From Macrostomum lignano (Eukaryota), in NCBI GenBank assembly GCA_002269645.1, contig NIVC01000504.1, positions 124,001-188,000 on the forward strand: DNA of 64,000 nucleotides, given 5' to 3'. Made by a program: the position numbers and the translations under genes. Of this stretch, positions 857 through 26,800 are shown in pieces. Within the stretch, counting starts at the first letter, position 1, and the number at the start of each line of letters is the position of its first letter. The notes below the pieces were generated by a model that was given only the letters and a program-made list of their open reading frames with translations, was not told where the DNA came from and ran no database searches.

Positions 857-1375
857 CTAGAAGAATGGGGACTCCTCAATGAAGAATGGGGACTGTTCAG
901 TAAAGAATCCGGACTTCCCAGTAAAGAATCGGGACTACTCAGAAAGAATCGTGGCTCCTCAATGAAGAATCGGGACTCCTCAGTAAATAATCAGGACTCC
1001 TCAGTAAATAATCGGGACTCCTCAGTAAATAATCGGGACTCCTCAGTAAAGAATCGGGACTCCTCAGTAAAGAATCGGGACTACTCAGAAAGAATCGGGG
1101 ATCATCAATGAAGAATCGGGACTCCTGACTAAAGAATCGGGACTCCTCAATGAAGAATTGGGACCCCTCAATGAAGAATCGGGGCTCATCAATGAAGAAT
1201 CGGGACCCCTCAGTAAATAATCGAGACTCCTCAATGAAGAATCGGGGCTCATCAATGAAAAATCGGGACACCTTAATGATGAATTGGGACCCCTCAATGA
1301 AGAATTGGCATTGGCACCCCTCAATGAAGAATCGGGGCTTATCAATGAAGAATCGGGGCTCTTCAAACGAGAATT
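857..1375. repeat. 21-bp minisatellite
   Basis: Unit approx CCTCAATGAAGAATCGGGACT; explains ORFs 939..1377. Confidence 0.95.
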
Positions 1376-1518
1376 GAAACGGGAAAGTTAATAAGCAGTA
1401 ACCGGCACACTTTAAAAGTCAGAACTTTATAAGAACATTTAGCCGTCAGAAAATTGCAGGTTATAAAAATCCGATTTGACCAGTGCTTAAGCCGCTAATT
1501 AACTACCGATAACAGAAG

Positions 1519-4500
1519 TCAGTGAGCAGTGCCACCAGGTACCAGAGTGCGCAACTGCTTGAGCACAACCTCAGTCTCCTTGCGCTGCTTGCTACGGAAA
1601 TTAGCCAAAAAGCTGCCCTTGCGCCGGTCGAATTCTCGAACTTTCTCCAACAGCTGCACAGCCTTGGAGACGGTCACTCGATCGTAGCGGCTCCTCGGAC
1701 CAGTCTGGCACTCGCGCAAAAACACATGCCAATCGTTGCTGACAACCAGGCGCAACAATTGACTCAATTCTTCGAATGCCATGCACAGGGTCTCGGGTTC
1801 GAGTCCTGGCACCGGTGAATTAGTAGCGAACGCTTTACAACAGGCGATATCAGATGAGAGCTGCAGTAGTACAGCTGGGCCTATCGACCGGACCTGAGGA
1901 TCCATCACCAGGCCTAGCAGCTCCTCATGTACGTGCTTGCACGAGATTAGGCAGGCTGTTTGAGCCACCTGAAATTCAAAATTAAAAATTAGTATGAACT
2001 ACTTTTTGTAAGCAGTTAGATGCAATAAATATCACATTTTTTTCATAATTCAGCTGCATCCCTAAGTCTACATAGAGCAGTCCCTTTAGTCTAGATTGAG
2101 CAGTCCCATTAGTCTAGATTGAGCAGTCCCATTAGTCTAGATTGAGCAGTCCCATTAGTCTAGATTGAGCAGTCCCATTAGTCTAGATTGAGCAGTCCCA
2201 TTAGTCTAGATTGAGCAGTCCCATTAGTCTAGATTGAGCAGTCCCATTAGTCTAGATTGAGCAGTCCCATTAGTCTAGATTGAGCAGTCCCATTAGTCTA
2301 GATTGAGCAGTCCCATTAGTCTAGATTGAGCAGTCCCATTAGTCTAGATTGAGCAGTCCCATTAGTCTAGATTGAGCAGTCCCATTAGTCTAGATTGAGC
2401 AGTCCCATTAGTCTAGATTGAGCAGTCCCATTAGTCTAGATTGAGCAGTCCCATTAGTCTAGATTGAGCAGTCCCATTAGTCTAGATTGAGCAGTCCCAT
2501 TAGTCTAGATTGAGCAGTCCCATTAGTCTAGATTGAGCAGTCCCATTAGTCTAGATTGAGCAGTCCCATTAGTCTAGATTGAGTAGTCCCATTAGTCTAG
2601 ATTGAGCAGTCCCATTAGTCTAGATTGAGCAGTCCCATTAGTCTAGATTGAGCAGTCCCATTAGTCTAGATTGAGCAGTCCCATTAGTCTAGATTGAGCA
2701 GTCCCATTAGTCTAGATTGAGCAGTCCCATTAGTCTAGATTGAGCAGTCCCATTAGTCTAGATTGAGCAGTCCCATTAGTCTAGATTGAGCAGTCCCATT
2801 AGTCTAGATTGAGCAGTCCCATTAGTCTAGATTGAGCAGTCCCATTAGTCTAGATTGAGCAGTCCCATTAGTCTAGATTGAGCAGTCCCATTAGTCTAGA
2901 TTGAGCATTCCATCAGTCTAGATTGAGCAGTCCCATTAGTCTAGATTGAGCAGTCCCTTAGTCTAGATTGAGCAGTCCCATTAGTCTAGATTGAGCAGTC
3001 CCATTAGTCTAGATTGAGCAGTCCCTTAGTCTAGATTGAGCAGTCCCATTAGTCTAGATTGAGCAGTCCCATTAGTCTAGATTGAGCAGTCCCATTAGTC
3101 TAGATTGAGCAGTCCCATTAGTCTAGATTGAGCAGTCCCATTAGTCTAGATTGAGCAGTCCCATTAGTCTAGATTGAGCAGTCCCATTAGTCTAGATTGA
3201 GCAGTCCCATTAGTCTAGATTGAGCAGTCCCATTAGTCTAGATTGAGCATTCCATCAGTCTAGATTGAGCAGTCCCTTAGTCCAGATTGAGCAGTCCCTT
3301 AGTCTAGATTGAGCAGTCCCTTAGTCTAGATTGAACAGTCCCTTAGTCTACACTGAGCAGTCCCTTAGTCTCTACACTGAGCAGTCCCTTAGTCTCTACA
3401 CTGAGCAGTCCCTTAGTCTCTACACTGAGCAGTCCCTTAGTCTCTACACTGAGCAGTCCCTTAGTCTACACTCTACACTGAGCGGTCCCTTAGTCTACAC
3501 TCTACACTGAGCAGTCCCTTAGTCTACACTCTACACTGAGCAGTCCCTTAGTCTACACTCTACACTGAGCGGTCCCTTAGTCTACACTCTACACTGAGCA
3601 GTCCCTTAGTCTACACTCTACACTGAGCAGTCCCTTAGTCTACACTCTACACTGAGCAGTCCCTTAGTCTACACTCTACACTGAGCAGTCCCTTAGTCTA
3701 CACTCTACACTGAGCAGTCCCTTAGTCTACACTCTACACTGAGCAGTCCCTTAGTCTACACTCTACACTGAGCAGTCCCTTAGTCTCTACACTGAGCAGT
3801 CCCTTAGTCTCTACACTGAGCAGTCCCTAAGAGGCAGCACTCACCTTGGGTGGCAGATTAGTGAAGGCGGTAAAGGTGGAGTGCAGATAGGCCATCAGAT
3901 CCGACACCCAAGCTGATGGCGGCGGCAACTGCTGCTGCAGATTCTGAGCACTCTGAGCCTGCTGTTGGCCATGATTGCCACTAGAAGTATGCCCAGCTTC
4001 GATGGGATCGTAATCCCAATCGTATTCGGCTAGGGAGATCATCTTGTTCACCTGAGATTGGTTTTTTATCGAGGAGTAATAAAGTAAGTCCCTTCGGGAT
4101 TCTCGTGCGAGATTTTTAAAAAAGGTGATTCTTAAGAGGTAAGCATTAGATCACAGGGTGAGATTCTCTAGGTAAAGGTGGGTATTAAATCTCAGGGTGA
4201 GATTCTCTAGGTAGAGGTGGGCACTAAATCTCAGGGTGAGATTCTCTAGGTAAAGGTGGGTACTAAATCTCAGGGTGAGATTCTCTAGGTAAAGGTGGGT
4301 ATTAAATCTCAGGGTGAGATTCTCTAGGTAGAGGTGGGCACTAAATCTCAGGGTGAGATTCTCTAGGTAAAGGTGGGTACTAAATCTCAGGGTGAGATTC
4401 TCTAGGTAAAGGTGGGTACTTAATATCAGGGTGAGATCTCTAGGTAGAGGTAGGTACTAAATCTCAGGTGAGATTCTCTAGGCAGAGGTGGGTACTGGAT

Positions 4501-7339
4501 CTCAGGGTGAGATTCTCTAGGTAGAGGTAGGTACTAAATCTCAGATGAGATTCTCTAGGCAGAGGTGGGTACTGGATCTTAAGTCGAGATTCTCTAGGTA
4601 AAGGTGGGCACTAAATCTCAGGGTGAGATTCTCTAGGTAGAGGTGGGTATTAAATCTCAGGATGAAATTCTCTAGAGATAGATATTAGATCTTAGGGTGA
4701 GACTCTAAAGGTATGGGTTTTAGATCTCAGGATGAGATAATCTAAGGTTGGATACTAGATCTTAAGGTGAGATTTTCTAGAAATGGACATTGGATTTCAA
4801 GGTGAGACTCTATAGGGATGGATACAAGATCTCAGAGTGAGATTCTCTAGTCGATCCTTAACTTTCAAAGAGAAGATTCTATAAAATGTTCGTATGGGGT
4901 TTCAGGTGTCTAGGATCCATCAACGCGCACCTGTTCCTTCATCTTCTCGTAGGCAAATGATTCGCATTCTGCCTGGCAGTCTTTAAACACAGCCTTGCCG
5001 TGCAGCTTGACTCCGCCGCTATCCAATCGCTGCATAGTGTACGCTTCTAAGCGATCGCAGACTTCCTCTAACGCTTCAACGTTGACAATCATTTGAATCA
5101 GCTCCGGTAGATGCAGCTCTCTTAACCGTTCTTTGAAACAGTCGCGAACTGTATAGGCTAGCAGGTCGTTAATTGCCTTGCTCAGGCTGTCCTCCAGTTC
5201 GGCGTTCGAGGTGCCCCCGGCGTCGGCCGATGCCCCGTCGTGAAAGCAAAGGCATTCGTCGACAAATTGAGCACAGGTTGAGTACACTAGGGGCACCATC
5301 TGGCTGAAGCTGGTTCTCTTTGGATAGGGCAGAGAGTCGAACTCAGCCGAGCTGAACGGGTACAGATCGAGTACTTGAGCCTGGAGCGTTGAGCAGATGG
5401 GGTAGGTGAGGGTTCTGAGTTTGAGTAAATACTAATGCTAATAAGAATAGTATACAGGGTAGTCTGTGTACTTTTTAGAGCCAATGTACATTGAGGAGCC
5501 GGGGGACAGAACCAATGTACATTGAGGAGCCGGGGAACAGAGCCAATGTACACTGACGAGTCGGGGGACAGGGCTAATGAACATTGAGACGCCAAGGGGA
5601 GAGAGCTAATGTACATTGAGGAGACAAGGGGAGAGAGCTAATGTACATTGAGTGATCAAGGGGAGAGAGCTAATGTAGATTGGGGAGCCAGTGGATAGAG
5701 CTAATGTACATTGAGAAGCCAAGGGGAGAGAGCTAATGTACATTGGGGAGCCAGTGGATAGAGCTAATGTACATTGAGTAGCCAAGGGGAGAGAGCTAAT
5801 GTACATTGGGGAGCCAGTGGATAGAGCTAATGTACATTGAGTAGCCAGAGGAGAGAGCTAATGTACATTGGGGAGCCAATGGAGAGAGCTAATGTACATT
5901 GAGTAGTCAAGGGGAGAGAGCTAATGTACATTGAGTAGACAAGGGGAGAGAGCGAATGTACATTAAGAAGCCAAGGGGAGAGAGCGAATGTACATTGGGG
6001 AGCTAGGAGAGAGGTAATGTAAATTGAGGAGCCGGCACAGAGAGAGCTTATGTACATTGAAGAGCCAGTGGAGAGAGCTAATGTACATTGAGGAGCTGTG
6101 GGGACAGCCTATGTACATTGAGGTGCCAGTGAAGAATACACACTCGCCTTATAATCCTCGGCATTCTGCAACAGCATAGCCGTATAATTATCGTCAGCAA
6201 AGATGTGCTGAAACATTGGTCGATAGTTGTCTTGCAATACGCGAAAGTACTTTGCCTGCATCTCTTTGATCAGATCGGACACGAGAGCCACTCGATAGCC
6301 ATAGGATCGCATAGCAATCAGCAACAGTTGAATGTACTTTTTAAAGTCCAACAGAGCGTCAGTATTTTCCAGCTTATCAGACAGTCTGGCGCGCACTAAT
6401 CTGGTAAGAATTTCTAAAGCATTCTGCCACAATTCGTTGAGAAATTCTCTAGTAACCATATCCGGCATAGTGTGATGCAGATTGTCTTCAACAACAAAGA
6501 AGCCGACAAACTGAGCAAAGAATTCGGCATAATTAACTCGGCTGCTGCCTAGAGGCGACATCTGCAGCATAGAGGTGCACTGGTAGCTGCGCTGGTTTCT
6601 ATAGTACTGCTGAAATCTGGCCTTCTCTCCTAACACTGTGTGAATATTGAGGCAGCGATAGACAGGTGAGAAATCTAATAAATCATCTATGTTGCTGCCC
6701 TCGCCATGGTCTAGGGGTTCCGAGCTGCTGCCAAGCATTGAGAAGGCTAAACCAGCCTGTTGAGCTACAAGTCTCAAGGCGATTGCACCAACTAGACGAC
6801 TCCTGTCGCCGCGGACACCAACTAGATAATCTTTCAGCTCGTTTTCGCTGGCCTCGCGAATCTGTTCACGAATTCTGGGCAGCTCTCGGCGAATGGCTTC
6901 GGTGAAAGCGTACGGAGGCAGCAGAGGAAGCAGACTGTGCTCGAGGCGTTCGAGAGTTTTCAGGGCGTGATAGGGTTGGCGACGGTTCATCTGAGCTCGG
7001 AGACGGCTGTAGGCATCCAGCACTGGCAGGCAGAGCTGCAGGCTCTCTCTGCGGATTAGCAGTGGGCGATTATCTGTGTATAAACTTTATGCAGAATGTT
7101 AGTTGTTATGAAAGGTCTTTTGAGCAATAAATGTCAGTAGAAATTCGATAGAGAAGGGAGCTATAGTACTCGTAGTTTATACAAATAGATACCGTTTGCA
7201 GAGACAGGCAGACAGACAGACAGATTCTAAGACAGACAGACAGATAGACATATACAGACAGACAGACAGACAGATGGACAGACAGACAGACGGATAGACA
7301 GACAAAAAGACACTAAGACAGACAGACAGACAGACAGAC

Positions 7340-7417
<78 letters not shown>

Positions 7418-7587
7418 GGACAGACAGACGGACAGAAAGACGGACAGACAGACGGACAGACAGACAGATAGATAGATAAATAGACAGACAGAGACAAACA
7501 GACAGACGGACAGACAGACAGACAGACGGATAGACAGACAGACGGATAGACAGACAAAAAGACACTAAGACAGACAGACAGACAGAC

Positions 7588-7636
<49 letters not shown>

Positions 7637-7637
7637 C

Positions 7638-7676
<39 letters not shown>

Positions 7677-7689
7677 AAGACAGACAGAA

Positions 7690-7733
<44 letters not shown>

Positions 7734-7749
7734 GGACAGAAAGACACTA

Positions 7750-7785
<36 letters not shown>

Positions 7786-7893
7786 GGACAGAAAGACACT
7801 AAGACAGACAGACAGACAGACAGACAGACGGACAGACAGACAGACGGATAGACAGACAAAAAGACACTAAGACAGACAGACAGACAGACAGAC

Positions 7894-7960
<67 letters not shown>

Positions 7961-7963
7961 CTA

Positions 7964-8008
<45 letters not shown>

Positions 8009-8009
8009 C

Positions 8010-8058
<49 letters not shown>

Positions 8059-8079
8059 TAGACAGACAGACAGACAGAC

Positions 8080-8124
<45 letters not shown>

Positions 8125-8679
8125 GTCAGACAGACAGACAGTCAGCCAACCCACCTAGCCGAGTCCAGATTGTGCAGAGTCTGTCCAGACTGCATGAGGT
8201 CAACGCACAGCGAGTTCAATCTGGCGCAGACTTCGTTCACCCGACTAGAAACGTCGGCCACACGGCGCTGAAGCTGCGATGCGTCAGATTTCACCTGAAG
8301 TTACAGACAAGGGAAAAGGTGTTTAATTGGGAAACTAATAAAATCCAGATAATAGTAAGCCTCATAAACAATCTGAAATCACCTGCAACAACTGCCCAAT
8401 GCTTTCAACAAAGCCTTCATAATGCAGACTGCACAGCGACTCAATATGCTGATTATGCTCTTGCACTCTAGCTCGCAATTGTTCGGAGAACTCTGTCAGC
8501 CGACTCAAGCTGTCTAACTGCAGTACTAGATTGGCAGAGTTAGCGCCGGCAGTGCTTGACTCGACTTCTTTAACAAGCAGACTGATTCGGGAAGTTTGCT
8601 GCTGCAGTTGCTGCTGCTGCTCCTGTAAAACTGTTGCCGCCGCAGTAGCAGAAGACGGCACAGTGGCAGCGGAGTCCAT
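1519..8679 (-). CDS. EXOC6: Exocyst complex component 6 (Sec15), ~814 aa, 6 exons
   Basis: Exons complement(8383..8679, 8155..8294, 6148..7048, 4931..5380, 3845..4051, 1519..1968) total 2445 nt with consistent phases. Recognisable Sec15 motifs: [45 protein letters not shown]-like, [63 protein letters not shown]. Intron 3 probably has a GC donor. Confidence 0.95.
2075..3826. repeat. 23-bp minisatellite grading into 22/24/29-bp variants (EXOC6 intron 5)
   Basis: TAGTCTAGATTGAGCAGTCCCAT changing to TAGTCTACACTCTACACTGAGCAGTCCCT. Confidence 0.97.
4150..4850. repeat. 39-bp minisatellite (EXOC6 intron 4)
   Basis: Unit TAAATCTCAGGGTGAGATTCTCTAGGTAAAGGTGGGTAC, decaying toward 4850. Confidence 0.9.
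5480..6125. repeat. Degenerate minisatellite built on GAGAGCTAATGTACATTG (EXOC6 intron 3)
   Basis: Recurrent AGAGCTAATGTACATTG every ~33-40 bp. Confidence 0.9.
7200..8145. repeat. Compound (GACA)n/(GATA)n microsatellite (EXOC6 intron 2)
   Basis: Direct inspection; source of the spurious SVCL ORFs. Confidence 0.97.
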
Positions 8680-8753
8680 TGTTGGTTAACAAAAAGCAAG
8701 CAAGAATTAACAACTACAATAAACCAGAAGAAGACAGTTAAGGACAAAAAGTT

Positions 8754-11700
8754 TCACTGCTGCAGATTGCCAGCAATGCTCTGAACTCGCTGTTCAGCGT
8801 TGCGAAGCTGGCTAATGAGTTGATCGAGACCAGCTGAGTCCAGCCTCACAGTCACCGACTTCTGTGAATGGATTATTTAGGAATATACGATTTAAGGTCT
8901 GTAGCATACTTTTGGGTTTTTACCCAAAAAGACATAAATTTTACCAAATACAAATATTTCAGTCAATAATATGCCACCTCACTACTCATCAGTAGTCAGA
9001 GACAAAGTTTAGTTAACAATTGCCAGTAGAACTAATTGATAGTTAAATGAATTCATTCTAGATAAGTTGCTATTACTCACTGCTCACTGGTGGAGCCACA
9101 TGGTATTTATTATCTAGCATTATTCCCTTTAGCAGCCCTCAACCAATAGGAATGCATCTTTACTTCCTATCCAATGAAATTCACCCAGACCAAATGCCAA
9201 CCCCATCCTTCCAAATTTGTGGGAATCTAGTTTCCTTTTCGTCAAACTTTTTGAAACTTTTGTCAAACTCTTAACTATTTGACACCCATTTGGACAAGTT
9301 TCTGTGGCATCATTGCCACCTGCGCAACACCTTTGGCAATATCCTTATTGGATAATACATTACTATAATTTCTAAGTAGTCTTTCTTGTTTGAATAGTCA
9401 AAACTAGTTTTAAAAACTTTACGTTGTTTCTTGGTTGTTAAACTTAAATATTGAAATTTTAGAAAAAACACAACATGCAAAATTAGAAGATTGCCTGATT
9501 TTTAGAGATTGGATAAGACTTCAATCTTGAATCAATATTTGAGATTTTGAATTTTTTCTCTATCAAATCTCAATTGAATCTTGATTTTAAAAAGTGCCAA
9601 AAATCTGAGATATAAAATAAAGTAAAAATAAAGAGCCCTAGGTTGAATAGGCCTACCAATCTTCTGAATATAGCATAGATTACCTAGATGTCAATTTAAT
9701 TGCATTGAATTCAATATGAATCAAATTTGTTCCAAATAACAACTCATTATAGTGTCATCCATATTAAGGGATTTAGGATTTAACCATGTTTGAAAAATAA
9801 TATACCTAAAAATTTGTGCTTTTTACAAATTAAAGGTTGTAATTTTTAATAAAAGTGCATAAAGTTTGTTTGTTTTTGAATATATATAAATCTTTATAAA
9901 GAAAACTGTTTTTTTAGTTTTTAGCTTTGTCTTATCTAAATTAAATATCTTAAAATCTCAATCAAATCTCATATCATATTAAGTCTTATAACTATATTAA
10001 GATCATATAGTATACAACCAAAAATTTAGGTGTGCATTGGCCTTGCACACCAAAATTAGGCATGCACAGCTGGCATGTGTGGTAGGTGGGGCTACCATGG
10101 TGTTTTTTTGTTTGTCCCCAGGTTTGGTCCCTTTGGTCCACCATGAGGTGACAATGATGTAGTTTCCGCCATCTCCCATTCCTAGGTTTGCCCCTTTGGC
10201 TAGTCCCACTGTTGTGCCCTCATGTGGTCTGCCCTTTTCCCGTTTGTGGTCCTTTTGTTGTGCCACCCCTGTGCTCTAATTTACTTTTGCTTAATTTTGT
10301 TAATTCTTTTTGTTTTGCCCATTTGATATGCCACTAGTGGTTTCCGATTTGGCCCTAGTGTTGGCCTCATGTATCCTAGTTGATATCCCAATTTATTTTG
10401 TTTAATATTTAATTCATGCAAAATTGTAGCATTCACTCATGTCTTCCCTTCCCTCCCTTTTCCCTCTGCTTTTCTTTTTGCCTCTCGTTTGTTTCTCCTT
10501 TTATTTTCGTGCTATTATTATCAAGTTTTGTTTGTTAATTAAGTTTGCAATCTTATAAATTATCTTAGCACCCTGGCTCGCAATTTGCTCTCTGTCACCT
10601 TGATAACAATTACTTCAACATTATTATTTTGCCATTAAACATAATAAAACATTAATTTGCTACTTAATTTACTCTTCATCCATTAATTGAAGCCTTGTTA
10701 GTCTATATTAAGTCATTTGCCCGTGGGGCATAAAATAACCAAGTTCTCAACTCAAAGAAAGTCTGAGACTTCAACATTCCATAATACATAAATTACGGTG
10801 TTGGCAGCTCTACCCTACTGAAAGTAAGCAGTTCAGCAATTTCAAGGCATAAATTCTATAGTATCAAAAGCTCTGGTACTGACTGGTATCCACCATCTGA
10901 ACGACTATACTGCTCTAACGACCGCTCTGCTACGATTACAATACCCTCCCCCCAGACTTGAGGAACCTGGCAGTTGGAGTATCAAAGGAGAAAAGTGTCC
11001 AAATATTTCTGCAAAATTTTTCTGGCTCTACGAGTGCCAAGATCATGAAGGCGGTAGTTCAAAAGTTTAGAAAACCAACCTGTCCAAAAAATTTCTTTTC
11101 TCCGCCCCTACCTCACATGTATCACTCCTGAGAAAATAGTATTCGTACATACCTGGCATGCACTTTATAGAATCATGCATAAGAGTTGTTGTAAAGTAGA
11201 AAAAAGATAAAAAAGTTAATTTCTAAGCATAAATTTTAAGTTTTCCAGTTTTTAAGCTCATGAAAAGCATTTAAACAAATCTTGGCATGTATCAATTTTC
11301 TGCTAATAAGTATCGCTGAAAAAGTATAAAAATGAACCAAATTATCTGCTAATTAGGGTCTATTATGCAATTTAAAAAAGGTTGTTTATTGAATTATTGT
11401 CACAATATAAAAAAGGTCATTTATTGTCGCAACACTAGCATATTTTTGAGAATGGGCATGCACTAATTTTTTTAGGCCTGCATTTGTACTTTTTCAATTT
11501 TTGCTTGGGCATGCACCCAGCATGATCTAGACTATGGTTCTTAGGCTTACACCAAAAATTAGCATGAATTTGTACTTAGTCTTAAGCTAGGCCCCTAGAC
11601 ATATAGTAAGAACCTAGGTTCACAAATCTAAAATAAAAATTACCTAGCTAGCATACAAGGCTTCATTCATGATACATTAAATTTTTATAAACAGTATAAC

Positions 11701-11806
11701 TGACCTGGCTGCTGGGCTGCAGAGTAAGAAGCAGAGAAGATGCCTCTTTTGAAGTGATATCTGCCTTTAGAACGTTCCAACGATACTTTGAATCTTTAGT
11801 TGCCAT
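8754..11806 (-). CDS. Small 69-aa two-exon protein, tentatively COMM-domain-like (absent from ORF track)
   Basis: complement(11705..11806) MATKDSKYRWNVLKADITSKEASSLLLTLQPSSQ ends at a CAG|GTCAGT donor, with an in-frame TAA just upstream of the ATG. complement(8754..8861) KSVTVRLDSAGLDQLISQLRNAEQRVQSIAGNLQQ* follows an ATTCACAG acceptor. Both junctions are phase 0 and both exons are GC-richer islands in AT-rich DNA. Family assignment is by eye only. Confidence 0.65.
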
Positions 11807-12420
11807 TGATTACAAATGAATATTAGTTAATTTGAACGTAGGTGACGCAGCTAATAACAATCAGAAGTAGAAGAGGAAACCATTCTTGTAAGTTAAATTG
11901 AATACAGAAGAGTAGGCCTATTATTTGCAGAAAAATATGAAAAAATGAAATGAAAACTTTACCAGTTTTGATATTTTAACAACGTTGGTTAAAGTTAAGT
12001 TTAATTTAGTCCTAGAACAATTTTTCGACTGAACAACAAGCGCTTACACAGACTGATAGATAGGGTAGGCGGAGTAGGCCTAGCACTGGCTTGGAGTTAA
12101 ATTCTCATTTTCCTGGAAAACAAAGTTTAATGTTCTAACGTATAAAACTAAAACAAAGGATATTCGTTTAAAGACAGTTTAGTGAACAAAAACGTATTCA
12201 AGTAATACAAAAAAGTTCTGCACATTTTTAATTATTGTTTATAAAAAACTAATGTGCTGTGTATTTTTTCAGATTGTGTACATTTACTACAATCTAACAT
12301 TCCAAAGGGAGGCCGAATATAAAATTTCTTAAGCTTTGAATCTTCGAGTCAGAAATCAGCAGCTCTAGTTGGAAATTTTTGATTTGAGCTCCAAGCTAAC
12401 TTCCTCTTTGTGCAAATCAA

Positions 12421-16066
<3,646 letters not shown>

Positions 16067-17448: not shown

Positions 17449-20043
17449 ATGTCTAGCGCCAGGTTACTAAAACTAATTGTGGTTTTAATGTTCCTAAATG
17501 GCATCGAAAGTTGTAAGTACTTAATACGCTTATATTTTTTGTTTGAATAGATTGGAGGATTAGCAAGGCCATTCCTAATTTTAGCTAATCATTGCGGTCC
17601 CACAAAGTACGTGCAGCACAACGGTTCCGCTATTTCACTTGACGTCACAGTCAGCAGTGACGTCATCAATGCCAGTTTCTCAAACGCTCCAATTCCCAAC
17701 TGTCTGATGCTGTGCCGACTACGGGGCTGCGCGCTGGCCGTTGTCATGGAGACGAGCAACCAAAACTGCCAGATCGTGATCGTGAACGACGCTTCTCAGG
17801 TTCCTGGACCACTAGGAAGTCACGTGACAAGACGGATCGGATCCATCGTTGGATCGCTAATTTGGAAAGTAGAAAACTTTCTAGACATTATAAAATCGAG
17901 AGCTATTAATGCTTCTAGACTGAATCAGCTGTTTATTGGTGAGTGCGAGACGACCAAAAATTGCTTATACCGTGCAGTATACGGTGTCGTCACGTAGTTT
18001 AAAATATTTTTGCTTCAGAAAGCGGCACAGGAAGGACTGGCGATATCCAGTACGCTCTGATCCAAGTGACCGGCTGCTACCGCATCGAGGTGGTCGGAGC
18101 CAAAGGCGGCGACAACGCCTTCAACAACCGCATCGGTGGAGTTGGAGCCTTGGCAGCTGGCAGCTTCAACCTGACAGCCGGCACCCGGCTGGCCATCGTA
18201 GTCGGGCAGGCGGGCGGATCAGCCAAATCTGATGATTCCGGAGCCGGCGGCGGCGGAGGCAGCTTCGTGTACTCAACTGGACCGGCGGCTTCTCAGCAGC
18301 TGCTGGTGGCGGCTGGTGGCGGAGGCGGTGCGTCATATTCTAGAAGCGGTGAGACTTGCACCTCTTTGAAGCTTTAGATGTTCCTTGAATTCATTTCGTT
18401 AGGATGACTCAGATGGAATGAAGTAGTCCTTGATATCTTGTTTCTTAGAAAATCTTTAGAGAACCCTAATGTATTAAAAAATATCTGTACGTTTGTGTGT
18501 TTTGTAACCGGTATCTTTCAGATATTACACAGGTGTCTCGAGTTAAAAATTATCCTAAAATAACAAGATTTAATGTTATGTTTTACTGAAGTCCTTTGTG
18601 ACAACCCCCTAGGGTTGTAGCCTAGTGGCTAGAGCGTCGGACTCACGACTTGAAGGTCGTCGGACTCACGACTTGACGATTCCTGATCCCACTAGAAAAA
18701 TTTGTGTCTTTGAGCAAACTCTTAACTCTGCATTGCTTCAGTTCACCCAGCTGTAAAATGAGTGCCAGCATTAGCTGGGGTATTTAAGGGTGTGTGTGGG
18801 GATCCCCTCCAGTCCTTGGACTGAACAGCCGTACGCAGCCTTCAGATGCGCCACGCAATAGCTACGGCTGAGCTCTCGGTTGCGCATCTGGCCCAATTGG
18901 GGCAGATATAATCTATGATTCTTTATTATTTGTGTGCAAAAATTTATACACGAGTTGCATTGTTTGTGGCTTCTTTCGAAGAAACAATGTGGGTTGTCCT
19001 CACTTATTATTGTCAGTAATTGAATCAGACAGGTAAGACTATCTCCTATAAATATAAATGACTCCAAGAGCAGAAACAATTACAATGTACCACTGGACTT
19101 ACCTTTGCAATAAAAGTAGTGGTGAGTAGCGTTGCTACTCTGAGTTAGCGAACACGTCGGGGAGGGGCCGCCCCGGGCCTGTGTGGGCTTTCCAGTGTGC
19201 GTGCTCTGTCTGGCGGGGGGAGGGGTGGGTGCTTGAGTCCCCCCCGCCCCTTGGGGGTTTTTTAGGCCGCGCGGGGCTGCTCTGGCCCAGCTACCCTGTC
19301 TCGCGTTTGCAAGCTCATTTTTTTATCCGATTTTATTTTCCCCCTTTAAAGCCACATTTGTCTTTTAATCGCGTTCGAACTGAGCTCACTAAAATATAAT
19401 CGACCAATCACAAGGGCCTGTTCCGCCCGGGTTCGTCTTCCTCGCCCGTGCCGTGCCTTTGCCTTCCTTCCTCGGCGTCGTTCGTTAATAGCAGTTACTA
19501 AAAATATTAAACGAATTCAAAATTCCAGCTCACCCAGGGGAAGGCGGCAGCAATGGCAGCGACTCAATCGGCGGCTCGATCAACCGTTTAGGATTTGGCG
19601 GAGTCGATGGCCAGCCAGGAAGAAACAATCCGAGCTACTGGCCTTCGAACCGAAACTCAGGCGGCTGCGGAGCCGGTTGGCTGGGCAGGGCCGCGATGAA
19701 CCGCAGCAGCCCCAAGCAGGGTCAGAGAGGCAACGGCCGGGCACATGGCTGGGCTGGTGGCAAGGCAGGGCGGGATGGCTTCGGCGGCTTTGGTGGCTTC
19801 GGCGGCTTCGGCGGCGTCGGCGGCTTCGGCGGCGGCGGCGGAGGAGCGTCACGGGGCGCTGGGGGCGGCGGCGGCGGCTTCAGCGGAGGCGGCGCTGGCG
19901 ACGGTAAAAACCACGCCGGAGGTGGCGGGGGCTCGTTCTGCTGCGGCAGCGACTGCGTCACTGTCTCAGGCGGCAGCTTGGACAGCGAGCAGCGGGGCCG
20001 AGCTGCTCTGCGACTGTTGGCTCCGTTTACAGATCAGTGCTGA
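17449..20043 (+). CDS. Secreted PAN/apple-like + ALK/LTK glycine-rich domain (PF12810-like) protein, paralog 1, ~420 aa
   Basis: join(17449..17512,17585..17938,18019..18348,19529..20043) = 1263 nt, all introns phase 1. Signal-peptide exon MSSARLLKLIVVLMFLNGIES; Cys module CLMLCRLRGC..C; GRD motifs GCYRIEVVGAKGG, FNLTAGTRLAIVVGQAG, GGGGGSFVY, LLVAAGGGGG, GGCGAGW, GGFGGGGG, GGFSGG, GGGGGSFC. Confidence 0.85.
18612..18915 (+). mobile_element. tRNA-derived CORE-like SINE family B
   Basis: tRNA-like head TAGCCTAGTGG..GAGCGTCGGACTC; core TTAACTCTGCATTGCTTCAGTTCACCCAGCTGTAAAATG resembling the MIR/CORE domain; shared tail AGTCCTTGGACTGAACAGCCGTACGCAGCCTTCAGATG. Lies in intron 3 of GRD paralog 1. Confidence 0.8.
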
Positions 20044-20044
20044 G

Positions 20045-20046
20045 CT

Positions 20047-20091
<45 letters not shown>

Positions 20092-20112
20092 TAGACAGAC
20101 AGACAGACAGAC
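20045..20112. repeat. (GACA)n microsatellite directly after the paralog 1 stop codon
   Basis: Direct inspection. Confidence 0.95.
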
Positions 20113-20675
20113 AGAGTGCAAATCTCTATTGATGAATGATTATGTTTTAGAATAAAATTTTCTTAGCACACTATACAGTGCATCTCAATCTATCTTAATT
20201 TTTATCAGACTAATTCTTACTAAGCCCTGGAGTCAAGCACCGCAGTTGTATTAAAAACAGTGAATTACAATTTTGCGTAGTCACGGACGCGATACAAGTC
20301 AGTCAAGTGGGAGAGGAAAAACCTGTAGAACAGAGGCATTTAACAATCATTCCATGTCCGGCTATCATTTAAATGATACATACTATGTAAATCATGTACT
20401 ATGTAAATTTTTTTAATTTTAATCTACAGTAAACCAATATACGACGAGTATGTACTAGAAACGAAGTTACAAACGCCTCAACCGATTTTCAAAAATTCGC
20501 GCTATTAGATCAGAAAACGGGCTTCGGTACATATCTTCAGGTTAAAAAAGTTTCTCAATTAAATACTCAAAAAACAATTTTCATAATTTACTCGAAGGGA
20601 TAGCATTTGTTGTTGAATTATCAACACTTATCACCATGTAGAGTGGAAAACGATCTCAACTGCCCTTCATTAATC

Positions 20676-23882: not shown

Positions 23883-26800
23883 ATGAAGGCGTCCGCTCTG
23901 ATTCTCATCGTGGGCTCTGCCCTCGTGCTGCAAGTCGCTGCTCAGCTTGGTAAGTTTCTGTTGTTGTCTGCTCAGTCAATACTTCAAGACTGATTTAATC
24001 TGTTACTGACCGACAACGATCCCTTCCGTAATTCGCTCAGATCCCGTTTGCGACAGCTGTCCATCCAAGAACTGCACCTACGATAAGCGGCTGTCATGCA
24101 GCTGCACAGGCCTCAACCGGACAATCGAGATTGTGGATCCCGGAGACCGCGAGTACTTTAACGTCTCTCTCGGCTTCGTTGTGGACAACACTGGCAGCAT
24201 GAGGACGGAGATCGCGTCGGTGAAGTCCAGCATTCAGGCTGTTGTCAGTAAGTTTTACAGACAGTGATCTTCCGATTACCGAGTCGAAGTTGCTAAATGC
24301 ACCAATGTACGAGCGTATTACAAGAGTAGGTGATTATTGTCAAACATTGTCATTCCAGCTGCCACATCCGGAATCTTCGACAAGTACGTGATTGGCACCT
24401 ACAACGATCCCTACGTGGCCAACGTGTTCGAATCGACGGACGCTTCCGCCATCAACAGCTTTGTGAGCACAATCAACGCCAATGCTGGAGGCGACTGTCC
24501 TGAGATGGCAATGCACGGCATCCGGGATGTGGCCGACCGTCTCAGTCCCGGCTCCGTCATCTTTCTGTTCACCGACGCGAGCTCCAAGGATCTGGCTCTC
24601 GAGCCGGATGTCAAGGCTCTGCTGGAGTCCAAGAACATCCGGCTTAACGTTATGGCGACCGGAAATCTTTGCGGCATGGGTGCCGAGTTCTCTAGACTGA
24701 CCACCGCCACCAACGGAACAATCTACAGGACGCCCGACAAGTCCGATGTCGACTTCGTTATGAACTACATCAAGAACTTTGCCAAGTACGGCATTCGGTT
24801 CATCCGCGGCATGCCGACGACTCTGGAAGATCTGAAAGCCATCGCCGATGGAAGTGAGTTGCCACTTCTGATTTGAGGTTATAACAAATGTCAATTACAA
24901 GCATAAGCATAAAAAATGATTTTCCAAAATATTTCAGACTGCTCCTGCAAGACCAGCATTGAGAACCTCGTCTGCATCGAGCCCCCGACAAAGAGCTGTC
25001 CGTGCCCGGAGGGCTTCGAACATATTGTGGTGAAGAAGAAGGTGTGCGTGCCCGGTCCGTGCAAGAAGCACAAGTACGGCTCCCTAGGTTTCGTCATCGA
25101 CAACACGGGCTCAATGGCGGCTGAGATTTTCGCGGTGCGCGCTCATATCGCCAACATCATGGCCAACAACACCGTGTTTAAGGACTACGTGGTGGCTACA
25201 TTCGGCGATCCCTACAAGAAGAATGTGATTCGATCCAGCGACGAGTCGGTCATCCAGTCCTTTGTGAACTCGATCTCGCCATCTGCAGGCGGAGACTGTC
25301 CCGAGTTCGCCATGTCGGGTATCGAGGACGCGGCCAAGAAGGCCCGCAAGAACTCTGTGCTAGTCTTGTTCACCGATGCTGCAGCAAAAGATGCGAGCAA
25401 GCTGGCCGCTGTCAAGGCGCTGTTGTTGGCGAAGAACACGAAGCTGTTTGTCATCGCCACTGGCACCTTCTGCGGCTCCGGCGTGTACAAGGGAGAATTC
25501 GACGACCTCGCAGCTGCCTCTGGTGGGGACGTCATGACGCTGACAGCAAAGTCATCAGTTAGCGAGGTAAATTTACTTTTGAGCTCACTATTAATGCAAT
25601 ATCTGCTTGGAGTCATTTTATTCCAGTTAAGCTTTAAACAAAAACAAAGCAATCAAATCATTTTTTGGCAGATTCTTGACTTCCTCGCCCTGGCTGCTGC
25701 CGGCAAGTACTCACTGCGTTCGTTCCCTCGCTGCTTGGACGACATGCGAAAGATGAAGCCAGAACGTAAGTTTGTTGAGTTTTTCTCTTTTCAGAGTCGA
25801 ACTTTGCTAAGATTATAATTTTAAATTTTGTATAATAGAAAATTTGCTTCTTATCATATTTCAGGCTGCTGCAAATGGGTCATCCATCACAAATGCAAGC
25901 CAATTGAACGTAAGTTTCTTTACTTATTAGGTTGAAAATACCTTACTTTTGATTGGCGCTAATTATCGACGCTTCGACACTTCAGCGTCCTGCCCGCTCG
26001 GCTACAAGCGAGTGACGATGCGCAACAAAGTGTGCGGCTCGCCCAACGGCTGCCCCAGGAAGCGGGTCGGCTCTCTGGGGTTCATCATTGACGACACCGG
26101 CTCAATGGGTGCCGAGATCTTCGCCGTGCGGACTCACATCAGCGCCATCATGGCGAACAACACGGTGTTCAAGGACTACGTGGTATCCCGGTACGGCGAT
26201 CCCTACGTGAAGAATGTGATCCGGTCGAGCGACGCGTCCGCAATCCAGAGCTTCGTGAACGCGATCGGGCCTTCGGGCGGAGGCGACTGTCCCGAGTACG
26301 CCATGTCAGCCATTGAGGACGCAGCCAAGGAGGCACTCGAAAACTCCGTGCTCATCCTATTCACCGACGCTGCCGCAAAAGACGCAAACATGAGTGCCGA
26401 TGTCGCAGCTCTGCTGGTTTCTAAGAAAATCAAACTCTACGTGATCGGCACCGGCCAGTTTTGCGGTCCCAGAGTGTACAAGGGAGAGTACGACTACCTT
26501 GCTGCGGCATCTGGTGGCTCCGTGATGAAGCTGACTGCGAAGACCTCCGTTGGAGAGGTAAGCAATGCGAATCTTTGTGTAGTTGGGTTTGAGTTTCACT
26601 TCAGACAAGTTCTGATGCCAATGGACAGTGCTTTCACCGCAACCACTTTCCAAACTCACAGGTTCTCAACTTCATCGGGCTCGCCGCCTCCGGTATGACG
26701 TCATTTGATTCGCTGCCCAGCACCCTGGAGGGCCTGCACGGCATGCCGTATCGTGAGTTACTCAGCTTCTGATCCTGTGGAGTTAGATTTCACGATCAAA

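What the first reader, a model, noticed from the sequence alone, without database searches (positions are those of the whole stretch)
8680..11806. Hidden 69-aa two-exon micro-gene ending 74 bp upstream of EXOC6: possible COMM-like protein in an operon-style dicistron
Seen: two exons too short for the ORF track splice in phase 0 to MATKDSKYRWNVLKADITSKEASSLLLTLQPSSQKSVTVRLDSAGLDQLISQLRNAEQRVQSIAGNLQQ*. Its TGA (8754-8756) lies only 74 nt before the EXOC6 ATG (8679) on the same strand. The spacer holds a pyrimidine tract plus AG (TCTTCTTCTGGTTTATTGTAG, 8714) with no room for a separate promoter. Known: flatworms use spliced-leader trans-splicing, which resolves polycistronic transcripts; COMMD proteins act in endosomal recycling (Commander) and COMMD6 is a COMM-domain-only small protein. 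Inference: the pattern W-strand / LLLTL / VTVRLD..LDQLI..LR.....V..IA resembles a COMM domain, so a trafficking micro-protein may be co-transcribed with an exocyst subunit.
Basis: partly seen in the sequence, partly recalled or inferred. Interest (0 to 1): 0.72.

Follow-up and report, generated by a model that had tools for sequence, protein, structure and literature searches.

The report
Hidden micro-gene co-transcribed with flatworm EXOC6
A real, conserved 69-amino-acid protein gene, missed or mis-merged by existing annotation, sits 74 bases upstream of the exocyst gene EXOC6 in the flatworm Macrostomum lignano and shares a transcript with it, an arrangement common in this animal; its resemblance to COMM-domain proteins is only a weak lead.

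Summary
On the minus strand, exon 1 (11806-11705) and exon 2 (8861-8754) join in phase 0 through GT..AG into a 69-aa ORF. Its TGA lies 74 nt before the ATG of a six-exon, 816-aa EXOC6/Sec15 gene.

The window is Macrostomum lignano. A related species supplies an intron-free 2,689-nt RNA-type contig (L001). It carries a 68-aa orthologue (79% identical), a 65-nt spacer and then EXOC6. That contig confirms the splice junction and shows both ORFs on one spliced RNA.

The ORF is under strong purifying selection: dN/dS is about 0.12, and codon-position identity is 84/88/51%. The spacer is not conserved.

M. lignano is known to keep about 15% of its genes in spliced-leader operons, with a modal gap near 100 bp. 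The most likely mechanism is therefore an ordinary two-gene operon, resolved at the single Py-tract/AG in the spacer. This step is untested. The lack of any AAUAAA-like signal and an ATG-free inter-start stretch keep a true bicistronic mRNA alive as a rival.

The COMM assignment is a lead only. Pfam COMM is the top hit but sub-threshold. Foldseek's top hit for both AlphaFold models is human COMMD1, at E 0.1-0.16. Profile and pairwise sequence tests are not significant.

The parts
11851..11878 (-). Pyrimidine tract plus AG (TTTCCTCTTCTACTTCTGATTGTTATTAG|). This is a candidate 3' splice or SL trans-splice acceptor for the micro-gene. The first exon base would be 11850.
   Evidence: Sequence read. 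Function is inferred. If the SL were joined here, its AUG would open only an 8-codon ORF ending before the micro-gene ATG.
11807..11850 (-). Putative 5' UTR of the micro-gene. It contains no ATG and has an in-frame TAA at 11812-11810.
11705..11806 (-). Micro-gene coding exon 1 (34 codons, MATKDSKYRWNVLKADITSKEASSLLLTLQPSSQ). The donor GTCAGT begins at 11704.
   Evidence: It matches L001 positions 47-123 at 82% nucleotide identity.
8862..11704 (-). Phase-0 intron of the micro-gene (2,843 nt, GT..AG).
   Evidence: It is absent from the orthologous transcript contig L001.
8754..8861 (-). Micro-gene coding exon 2 (35 codons plus TGA at 8756-8754).
   Evidence: The same exon is fused onto EXOC6 in the UniProt model A0A1I8JQU1.
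8680..8753 (-). 74-nt intercistronic spacer. It carries a Py-rich tract (8745-8716) and the only AG (8715-8714), which is the candidate SL trans-splice acceptor. It has no AAUAAA-like hexamer and no ATG.
   Evidence: It is not conserved in sequence with the 65-nt spacer of L001 (37 of 74 identical positions; shuffles give 34.5 +/- 2.2). Both spacers are pyrimidine-rich before an AG.
1519..8679 (-). EXOC6/Sec15 gene, 816 aa in six exons: 8679-8383, 8294-8155, 7048-6142, 5380-4931, 4051-3845 and 1968-1519 (stop included).
   Evidence: Spliced model built against L001. Pfam gives Sec15_C at 4e-62 and EXOC6_Sec15_N at 4e-37. It is 85.8% identical to the L001 protein.
11851..12420 (.). Roughly 570-bp region between the micro-gene acceptor and the first ATG of a divergent plus-strand coiled-coil gene. 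It is the candidate shared or bidirectional promoter of the unit.
   Evidence: ORF layout. No minus-strand gene was seen upstream. Promoter function is inferred only.

Best explanation
This is a two-gene transcription unit of Macrostomum lignano. One promoter, upstream of about 11850, drives a primary transcript. That transcript encodes first a two-exon, 69-aa protein and then, 74 nt later, the exocyst subunit EXOC6.

Shown:
- The micro-ORF is a real protein-coding gene under purifying selection.
- Its intron is removed at 11705/8861.
- In a related species both ORFs sit on one fully cis-spliced RNA.

Inferred:
- As in the roughly 15% of M. lignano genes that lie in operons, the precursor is most likely resolved by adding the 35-nt spliced leader at the single Py-tract/AG in the spacer (first base 8713). 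That would give a separate, capped EXOC6 mRNA.
- The upstream product would carry the micro-gene.
- The micro-gene itself may be SL-trans-spliced at 11850.

The protein is predicted to fold as a three-stranded antiparallel sheet followed by a helix of about 25 residues. This is the topology of a COMM domain, which works by obligate dimerisation. My best guess is therefore a small dimerising or adaptor protein co-expressed with EXOC6. Family membership and function are not established.
For: - Anatomy.
- Organism: P0002 is UniRef100_A0A1I8JQU1, from Macrostomum lignano.
- Orthologue: contig L001 (Logan, SRR30276804) lacks the micro-gene intron and all five EXOC6 introns. It carries the 68-aa ORF at 29-235, a 65-nt spacer, and EXOC6 at 301-2688.
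- Selection: dN/dS is 0.115 and codon-position identities are 0.84/0.88/0.51. Fisher p is 5e-10, and micro-gene dN (0.153) is comparable to EXOC6 dN (0.099).
- The spacer is not conserved, but both species have a Py-rich tract (73% and 87%) before an AG.
[quoted passage not shown] The modal repeat-adjusted gap is about 100 bp, and most operons hold two genes (PMC8629364). About 7% of assembled transcripts are polycistronic precursors (PMC5730564).
- Fold: both AlphaFold2 models give E11-18, E24-32, E35-41 and H43-67, with pLDDT about 72.
- Foldseek's top hit for both models is human COMMD1 in the Commander ring (8p0w_A; E 0.097 and 0.16; probability 0.94 and 0.90; 66-68 aligned columns).
- Pfam COMM_domain is the best of 24,736 models for the M. 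lignano protein (E 0.057).
- W10 aligns with the invariant COMM tryptophan.
Against: - No SL-joined read could be examined, so trans-splicing at 8713 is untested.
- The acceptor is TTGTAG, not the commonest YTNCAG motif. That motif is present at only about 44% of mapped sites (PMC8629364).
- No AATAAA or any of 12 one-base variants occurs between 8861 and 8600, and the L001 spacer has none either. How the upstream mRNA would get its 3' end is therefore unexplained.
- An SL joined at 8713 would place its terminal AUG at the head of a 48-codon out-of-frame ORF that overlaps the EXOC6 start.
- The 284 nt between the two start codons contain no ATG in any frame (P about 0.03 in M. lignano). That pattern fits scanning-dependent translation of a bicistronic mRNA better than an operon.
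- COMM-like fold: every sequence test is sub-threshold. Foldseek E-values exceed 0.09, with rmsd near 8 Å.
Confidence: 0.6

Rival explanations
1. This is a true bicistronic mature mRNA. The micro-ORF and EXOC6 stay on one capped, polyadenylated mRNA. Ribosomes translate the 69-aa protein and reach the EXOC6 AUG by leaky scanning or reinitiation. No intercistronic processing is needed.
For: - The fully cis-spliced dicistronic contig L001 exists.
- There is no poly(A)-signal-like hexamer at the end of the micro-ORF or in the spacer in either species.
- No ATG occurs in any frame between the two initiators in either species. Given the protein and codon usage, P is 0.033 in M. lignano. No window of equal length within the EXOC6 mRNA is ATG-free.
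- In M. lignano the micro-ORF AUG has a weak context (T at -3), and the EXOC6 AUG a strong one (A at -3, G at +4).
Against: - Polycistronic precursors are routinely assembled from M. lignano RNA-seq (about 7% of transcripts, PMC5730564), so L001 does not discriminate between the two readings.
- The ATG-free stretch is not unusual in the GC-rich orthologue (P = 0.51).
- The Kozak asymmetry is reversed in that species: G at -3 for the micro-ORF, and C at -3 with T at +4 for EXOC6.
- Both spacers keep a Py-tract plus AG.
- Reinitiation after a 69-codon ORF is usually inefficient (general knowledge).
Confidence: 0.25
2. The micro-protein is a bona fide, strongly reduced member of the COMM-domain (COMMD) family, a COMM-only subunit like the short COMMD6 isoform. 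It would pair with other COMMDs of the Commander complex.
For: - Pfam COMM_domain is the top hit (E 0.057; residues 25-56 match profile positions 31-64 of 64).
- COMMD1 chains are the top Foldseek hits for both orthologue models.
- The strand-strand-strand-helix order and lengths match.
- MAFFT places W10 on the invariant COMM Trp, SLLLTL on the second strand, and SVTVRLDSAGLDQLI on the 'VTVELSKETLDTML' segment.
- Against my own COMM HMM, the M. lignano protein ranks 8th of 3000 shuffles.
Against: - The score is below the Pfam gathering score (14 against 22.4 bits), and the orthologue P0001 gives no COMM hit.
- hhalign probability is about 2%, P 0.02-0.03.
- The orthologue ranks 377th of 3000 shuffles.
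- Smith-Waterman Z-scores are 0.35-2.7, against 6-14 among human COMM domains.
- The near-invariant Pro and the segment between strands 1 and 2 are missing.
- An exhaustive HMM search of 1.84 billion representatives found no bridging homologues.
- Only COMMD1, out of ten COMMDs, appears among the Foldseek hits shown.
Confidence: 0.3
3. The ORF is a cis-acting regulatory upstream ORF (conserved-peptide uORF) of EXOC6. Its translation, not its product, matters.
For: It lies in the 5' part of an RNA that also carries EXOC6. The short spacer is compatible with uORF-type control.
Against: - Purifying selection acts along the whole 68 codons at a level similar to EXOC6.
- The product is predicted to fold into a compact domain, identically in both orthologues.
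- The ORF is split by its own 2.8-kb intron and is long for a uORF.
Confidence: 0.05
4. It is a chance ORF in non-coding 5' exons of EXOC6, or an annotation or assembly artefact.
For: It is very short. No stand-alone database entry exists for M. lignano.
Against: The orthologous ORF has the same start, frame and end, with dN/dS 0.115 and saturated synonymous sites, while the flanking UTR and spacer are not conserved.
Confidence: 0.02

Closest known systems
Spliced-leader operons of Macrostomum lignano (and, by analogy, C. elegans, Ciona and Schistosoma operons)
   Same: - Two same-strand genes sit 74 nt apart, close to the roughly 100-bp mode.
- Two-gene units are the commonest class.
- The downstream gene is a conserved housekeeping gene.
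- A Py-tract plus AG precedes the downstream ATG.
- A polycistronic spliced RNA is seen in a relative (PMC8629364, PMC5730564).
   Different: - No SL-joined read was seen here.
- No recognisable poly(A) signal exists for the upstream cistron.
- The upstream gene is an exceptionally small (69-aa), lineage-restricted ORF that current protein databases lack.
Animal bicistronic mRNAs with a small upstream protein (for example SNURF-SNRPN, ASDURF-ASNSD1, the MIEF1 microprotein); recalled from general knowledge, not tested here
   Same: A conserved protein of about 70 aa is encoded upstream of a large conserved ORF on one spliced RNA. The stretch between the two starts is ATG-free.
   Different: Those occur in organisms without SL trans-splicing. 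Here the host genome routinely resolves such precursors, so persistence as a mature bicistronic mRNA is unproven.
COMM domain (Pfam PF07258), including COMM-only COMMD6 short isoforms
   Same: - Size is similar, about 70 aa.
- The predicted fold is three antiparallel strands plus a C-terminal helix.
- A Trp opens strand 1.
- A 'VTV.L....LD.L' motif spans strand 3 into the helix.
- It is the best Pfam hit and the best Foldseek (COMMD1) hit.
   Different: - It fails the Pfam gathering score.
- It shows no significant profile or pairwise similarity.
- It lacks the near-invariant Pro and about 7 residues between strands 1 and 2, as well as the acidic loop between strands 2 and 3.
- No intermediate homologues are known.

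Membership tests
SL trans-spliced operon (M. lignano type) | Adjacent genes on the same strand with a short gap (under 1 kb repeat-adjusted; mode about 100 bp) | tested here: met
   There are 74 nt between the TGA (8754) and the ATG (8679), both on the minus strand. The criterion comes from PMC8629364.
SL trans-spliced operon (M. lignano type) | Both genes are present on one primary transcript | tested here: met
   Met in the related species: contig L001 carries both ORFs and is fully cis-spliced. For M. lignano itself this is inferred.
SL trans-spliced operon (M. lignano type) | The spliced leader is joined at an acceptor just upstream of the downstream gene | not testable with these tools
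   The only AG in the spacer (8715-8714) follows a 73% pyrimidine tract. No read-level data were available. The window holds no SL RNA gene.
SL trans-spliced operon (M. lignano type) | A 3'-end formation signal or poly(A) site for the upstream gene lies before the trans-splice site | tested here: not met
   Neither AATAAA nor 12 common variants occur in 8861-8600, and none is visible in the L001 spacer. The poly(A) signals actually used by M. lignano are not known to me, so this counts as a weak negative.
COMM domain (PF07258) | Score at or above the Pfam gathering threshold | tested here: not met
   It scores 14.0 bits against 22.4 (E 0.057), covering only profile positions 31-64. The orthologue P0001 gives no hit.
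COMM domain (PF07258) | Significant profile-profile or pairwise similarity to known COMM domains | tested here: not met
   - hhalign probability is 1.6-2.4%, P 0.02-0.03.
- Against my own HMM, the proteins score 7.8 and 3.0 bits, ranking 8th and 377th of 3000 shuffles.
- Smith-Waterman Z is 0.35-2.7, against 6-14 between human COMM domains.
COMM domain (PF07258) | Three antiparallel beta-strands followed by a C-terminal alpha-helix | tested here: met
   AlphaFold2 gives E11-18, E24-32, E35-41 and H43-67 for both orthologues, at pLDDT about 72 from only two sequences. This is a prediction of moderate confidence.
COMM domain (PF07258) | Structural match to solved COMMD chains | tested here: inconclusive
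   The top Foldseek hit in both runs is COMMD1 (8p0w_A, and also 8f2r_A). However, E is 0.097-0.49, TM-score (query-normalised) 0.43-0.50 and rmsd about 8 Å. Other COMMDs are not among the top 50.
COMM domain (PF07258) | Conserved Trp at strand 1 and near-invariant Pro before strand 2 | tested here: inconclusive
   W10 aligns with the invariant Trp. The Pro and its surrounding 7-residue segment are absent.
COMM domain (PF07258) | Obligate handshake dimerisation with another COMM domain | not testable with these tools
   No multimer prediction or experiment was available.
EXOC6/Sec15 (downstream gene) | Sec15 N-terminal and C-terminal domains above the Pfam thresholds | tested here: met
   PF20651 scores 128 bits and PF04091 scores 211 bits.

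The most novel reading that the evidence does not exclude
A Macrostomum-restricted, minimal COMM-only protein is translated from the same mature bicistronic mRNA as EXOC6. The spacer would have no poly(A) signal, and the leader between the two starts would be ATG-free. Its dose would then be hard-wired to an exocyst subunit, linking a Commander-like dimerisation module to exocytic tethering.
Probability: 0.08. Interest if true: 0.6.

Novelty: new member of a known kind. Interest (0 to 1): 0.4.

Why it matters
It corrects the annotation of this locus. The public M. lignano protein A0A1I8JQU1 is a chimera of micro-gene exon 2 and a truncated EXOC6, and the 69-aa protein has no stand-alone entry in the protein collections searched here.

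It adds a clean, comparatively validated example of a very small protein-coding gene hidden as the first cistron of a flatworm operon. This is a class that ORF-length filters systematically miss.

If the missing poly(A) signal and the ATG-free leader reflect a real bicistronic mRNA, the locus would be a convenient test case. It could show how an SL-trans-splicing animal chooses between resolving a precursor and translating it as it stands. M. lignano has transgenesis and RNAi, so both the expression mechanism and the protein's partners can be tested directly.

Tried and rejected
- A word-index homologue search with the EXOC6 N-terminus returned only distant EXOC6 proteins (36-37% identity) from unrelated small eukaryotes. 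Their loci, L002-L005, hold no micro-protein relative. No M. lignano transcript contigs could therefore be retrieved.
- An exhaustive HMM search of 1.84 billion representatives found only the orthologue P0001 and the chimeric model P0002. Hits P0003-P0005 are low-complexity repeat proteins.
- PDB sequence searches with the peptide or its two-sequence profile gave only designed armadillo repeats and other chance hits, with no COMMD chain.
- The weak Pfam hit to DUF6907 (E 0.06-0.2, helix region only) was set aside as a chance helical match.
- The 5' end of L001 (TTTTATTATG...) could be the tail of that species' spliced leader. It could equally be the homologue of the M. lignano outron tract TTGTTATTAG. 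I could not decide between them.
- Kozak-context logic for leaky scanning holds in M. lignano but is reversed in the orthologue, so it was dropped as evidence.
- Rfam found nothing in the window.
- A C-terminal sequence I recalled as COMMD1 proved to be COMMD8. It was used under that name only after the tool check.
Full report
**1. Observation.**
- Reading the minus strand of 8500-12000 and splicing the two proposed exons in a script reproduces the finding exactly.
- The ATG is at 11806-11804, and an in-frame TAA lies two codons upstream.
- Exon 1 is 11806-11705 (102 nt) and ends CAG|GTCAGT.
- Exon 2 begins after CATTCACAG| at 8861 and runs to the TGA at 8756-8754 (108 nt).
- The phase-0 product is MATKDSKYRWNVLKADITSKEASSLLLTLQPSSQKSVTVRLDSAGLDQLISQLRNAEQRVQSIAGNLQQ.
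- The spacer to the next ATG (8679) is 74 nt. It holds one AG only (8715-8714), preceded by a 73% pyrimidine stretch.
- In genomic DNA neither exon gives an ORF of 60 codons. This explains why it is 'hidden'.

**2. The downstream gene.**
- tblastn of the orthologous protein, plus a splice-site search, gives a six-exon gene of 816 aa: 8679-8383, 8294-8155, 7048-6142, 5380-4931, 4051-3845 and 1968-1519. All introns are GT..AG.
- Pfam gives Sec15_C (4e-62) and EXOC6_Sec15_N (4e-37). EXOC6 is confirmed.
- An in-frame TAA three codons before the 8679 ATG fixes its start (sequence).

**3. Organism.**
- The exhaustive profile search returned P0002, a 683-aa protein identical to the window over its length. 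It is UniRef100_A0A1I8JQU1, 'Sec15 domain-containing protein', from Macrostomum lignano.
- That model starts with KSVTVRLDSAGLDQLISQLRNAEQRVQSIAGNLQQ, which is micro-gene exon 2. It then jumps to EXOC6 residue about 125.
- The existing annotation therefore merges the two genes into a chimera and has no separate micro-protein.

**4. Is the micro-ORF a gene?**
- The word-index search found one relative, P0001 (68 aa, 79% identical, E 1.5e-24).
- It is encoded on a 2,689-nt Logan contig from run SRR30276804 (L001).
- L001 lacks the 2.8-kb micro-gene intron and all five EXOC6 introns. It is therefore an RNA-derived contig.
- Its layout is: micro-ORF at 29-235, an in-frame TAA two codons before its ATG, a 65-nt spacer, then EXOC6 from 301 to the contig end.
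- The exon-exon junction falls at the same codon as predicted for the window.
- Nei-Gojobori counts give pS 0.62, pN 0.14 and dN/dS 0.115. Codon-position identities are 0.84/0.88/0.51, and both other frames are closed in both species.
- Synonymous against non-synonymous change differs with Fisher p = 5e-10.
- EXOC6 between the same two species has dN 0.099 and saturated synonymous sites (pS 0.75). The micro-protein, at dN 0.153, is constrained about as strongly.
- The spacer is no more similar than shuffled sequence (37 identical positions against 34.5 +/- 2.2).
- Conclusion: this is a real, selected protein-coding gene, and the splice is confirmed by the orthologous transcript.

**5. How are the two genes expressed?**

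*What is shown and what the literature says.*
- Co-transcription is shown in the relative (L001) and inferred for M. lignano.
- Upstream of the micro-gene there is a strong Py-tract/AG at 11878-11851. Beyond it lie about 570 bp before a divergently oriented coiled-coil gene on the plus strand (first ATG about 12421). The micro-gene is therefore the first cistron, and there is room for one, possibly bidirectional, promoter.
- In M. lignano 30% of genes receive the 35-nt SL CGGTCTCTTACTGCGAAGACTCAATTTATTGCATG, and 15% lie in operons.
- The dominant repeat-adjusted gap is about 100 bp, and two-gene operons are the commonest class (PMC8629364).
- About 7% of assembled transcripts are polycistronic precursors (PMC5730564).
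- On that prior, with a Py-tract/AG in both species' spacers, the default reading is an ordinary SL operon resolved at 8714/8713.

*Three observations cut the other way.*
- Neither AATAAA nor any of 12 variants exists from 8861 to 8600, and none is seen in the L001 spacer.
- An SL joined at 8713 would put its AUG at the head of a 48-codon out-of-frame ORF across the EXOC6 start. At 11850 the SL AUG opens only 8 codons.
- No ATG in any frame lies between the two initiators in either species. Given the protein, EXOC6 codon usage and spacer composition, P is 0.033 in M. lignano but 0.51 in the GC-rich orthologue. No equally long window of either EXOC6 mRNA is ATG-free.

*Weighing them.*
- These points keep a genuine bicistronic mRNA (leaky scanning or reinitiation) as a serious rival.
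- Kozak contexts support it in M. lignano but are reversed in the orthologue.
- I put the operon at about 0.55-0.6 and the bicistronic mRNA at about 0.25. The two could also coexist.

**6. What is the protein?**

*Evidence favouring a COMM-like fold.*
- An HMM search over 1.84 billion representatives found no homologue beyond P0001 and the chimeric P0002. The protein is lineage-restricted or very divergent.
- AlphaFold2 on the two-sequence alignment, run with each orthologue as target, gives the same fold. There are three strands (11-18, 24-32, 35-41) and a helix (43-67), with mean pLDDT about 72.
- Foldseek against 350,542 PDB chains ranks human COMMD1 of the Commander ring first in both runs (8p0w_A; E 0.097 and 0.16; probability 0.94 and 0.90; 66-68 columns). 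8f2r_A (COMMD1) is second in the second run. The next hits are unrelated partial matches.
- Pfam's best model for the M. lignano peptide is COMM_domain (E 0.057, 14 bits against a gathering score of 22.4).
- Adding the peptides to a 49-sequence COMM alignment puts W10 on the invariant Trp and SLLLTL on strand 2. It puts SVTVRLDSAGLDQLISQL on the '(A/K)VTVELSKETLDTMLDGL' strand-3/helix segment.

*Evidence against membership.*
- P0001 gives no COMM hit.
- hhalign against COMM alignments of 3 and 53 sequences gives probability about 2%, P 0.02-0.03.
- Against my own COMM HMM the two proteins score 7.8 and 3.0 bits, ranking 8th and 377th among 3000 shuffles.
- Smith-Waterman Z-scores against human COMMD3, 8, 9 and 10 are 0.35-2.7, while those domains score 6-14 against each other.
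- The near-invariant Pro and the segment between strands 1 and 2 are missing.

*Conclusion.* 'COMM-like fold' is the best available lead, at roughly 0.3-0.35 that it is truly homologous. Membership fails the sequence-based defining tests, and the dimerisation that defines COMM function could not be tested.

**7. Comparison and novelty.**
- The arrangement works like a known M. lignano SL operon. Its unusual points are the tiny, previously unannotated first cistron and the missing poly(A) signal.
- The protein resembles a COMM-only unit in size and predicted topology but is not demonstrably one.
- I file it as a new member of a known kind. It has moderate interest as an annotation correction and as a tractable test case of operon against bicistronic mRNA.

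**8. Dead ends.**
- The EXOC6 N-terminus search gave only distant taxa with no micro-gene nearby.
- PDB sequence searches were uninformative.
- Rfam was empty.
- The second species could not be named.

Noticed in passing
window 860-8145 (EXOC6 introns and 3' flank): The EXOC6 introns are packed with long satellite arrays. These are (AGAC)n with about 234 copies at 7202-8145, a 23-mer x61 at 2065-3468, a 29-mer at 3347-3828, a 39-mer at 4150-4850, a 31/63-mer at 5477-6135 and a 21-mer at 860-1366.
   Followed up: no
UniProt A0A1I8JQU1 (P0002), mapping to window 8861-8754 plus EXOC6 exons: The public M. lignano gene model is a chimera. Micro-gene exon 2 is fused in frame to EXOC6 from about residue 125, apparently through a GT formed by CAG+TGA at the stop codon. 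Small internal deletions occur near the C-terminus.
   Followed up: partly
window 12421-16066, + strand: A divergently oriented multi-exon coiled-coil gene, with ORF pieces at 12421-12603, 13362-13565, 14062-14673 and 15794-16066. It gives only weak coiled-coil Pfam hits. Its start lies about 570 bp from the micro-gene acceptor, which suggests a bidirectional promoter.
   Followed up: partly
window 18066-20155, + strand: ORFs rich in glycine. One (18066-18377) matches the ALK/LTK glycine-rich domain at E 3e-10. The local GC content is 54%.
   Followed up: no
window 24337-26698, + strand: Three tandem ORFs at 24337-24876, 24916-25818 and 25949-26698. The last two match the VWA_4 (von Willebrand factor A) domain at about 1e-34; the first was not scanned but shares the conserved GDCPE and LFTDA sequence motifs. 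They are either a local gene-family expansion or a multi-domain gene.
   Followed up: no
L001 1-28: The 5' end of the orthologous transcript (TTTTATTATGCTTTTTATGCCCTAAGTT) has two in-frame ATGs closed by a TAA just before the micro-ORF start. Its first 10 nt resemble both the 3' end of flatworm spliced leaders (...ATG) and the M. lignano outron tract TTGTTATTAG.
   Followed up: partly
L003 395-823 (GCA_013332655.1): In an unrelated small eukaryote, a 142-aa alanine-rich ORF ends 22 nt before an EXOC6-like ORF. It shows no similarity to the micro-protein and is probably an upstream exon or a separate gene.
   Followed up: partly
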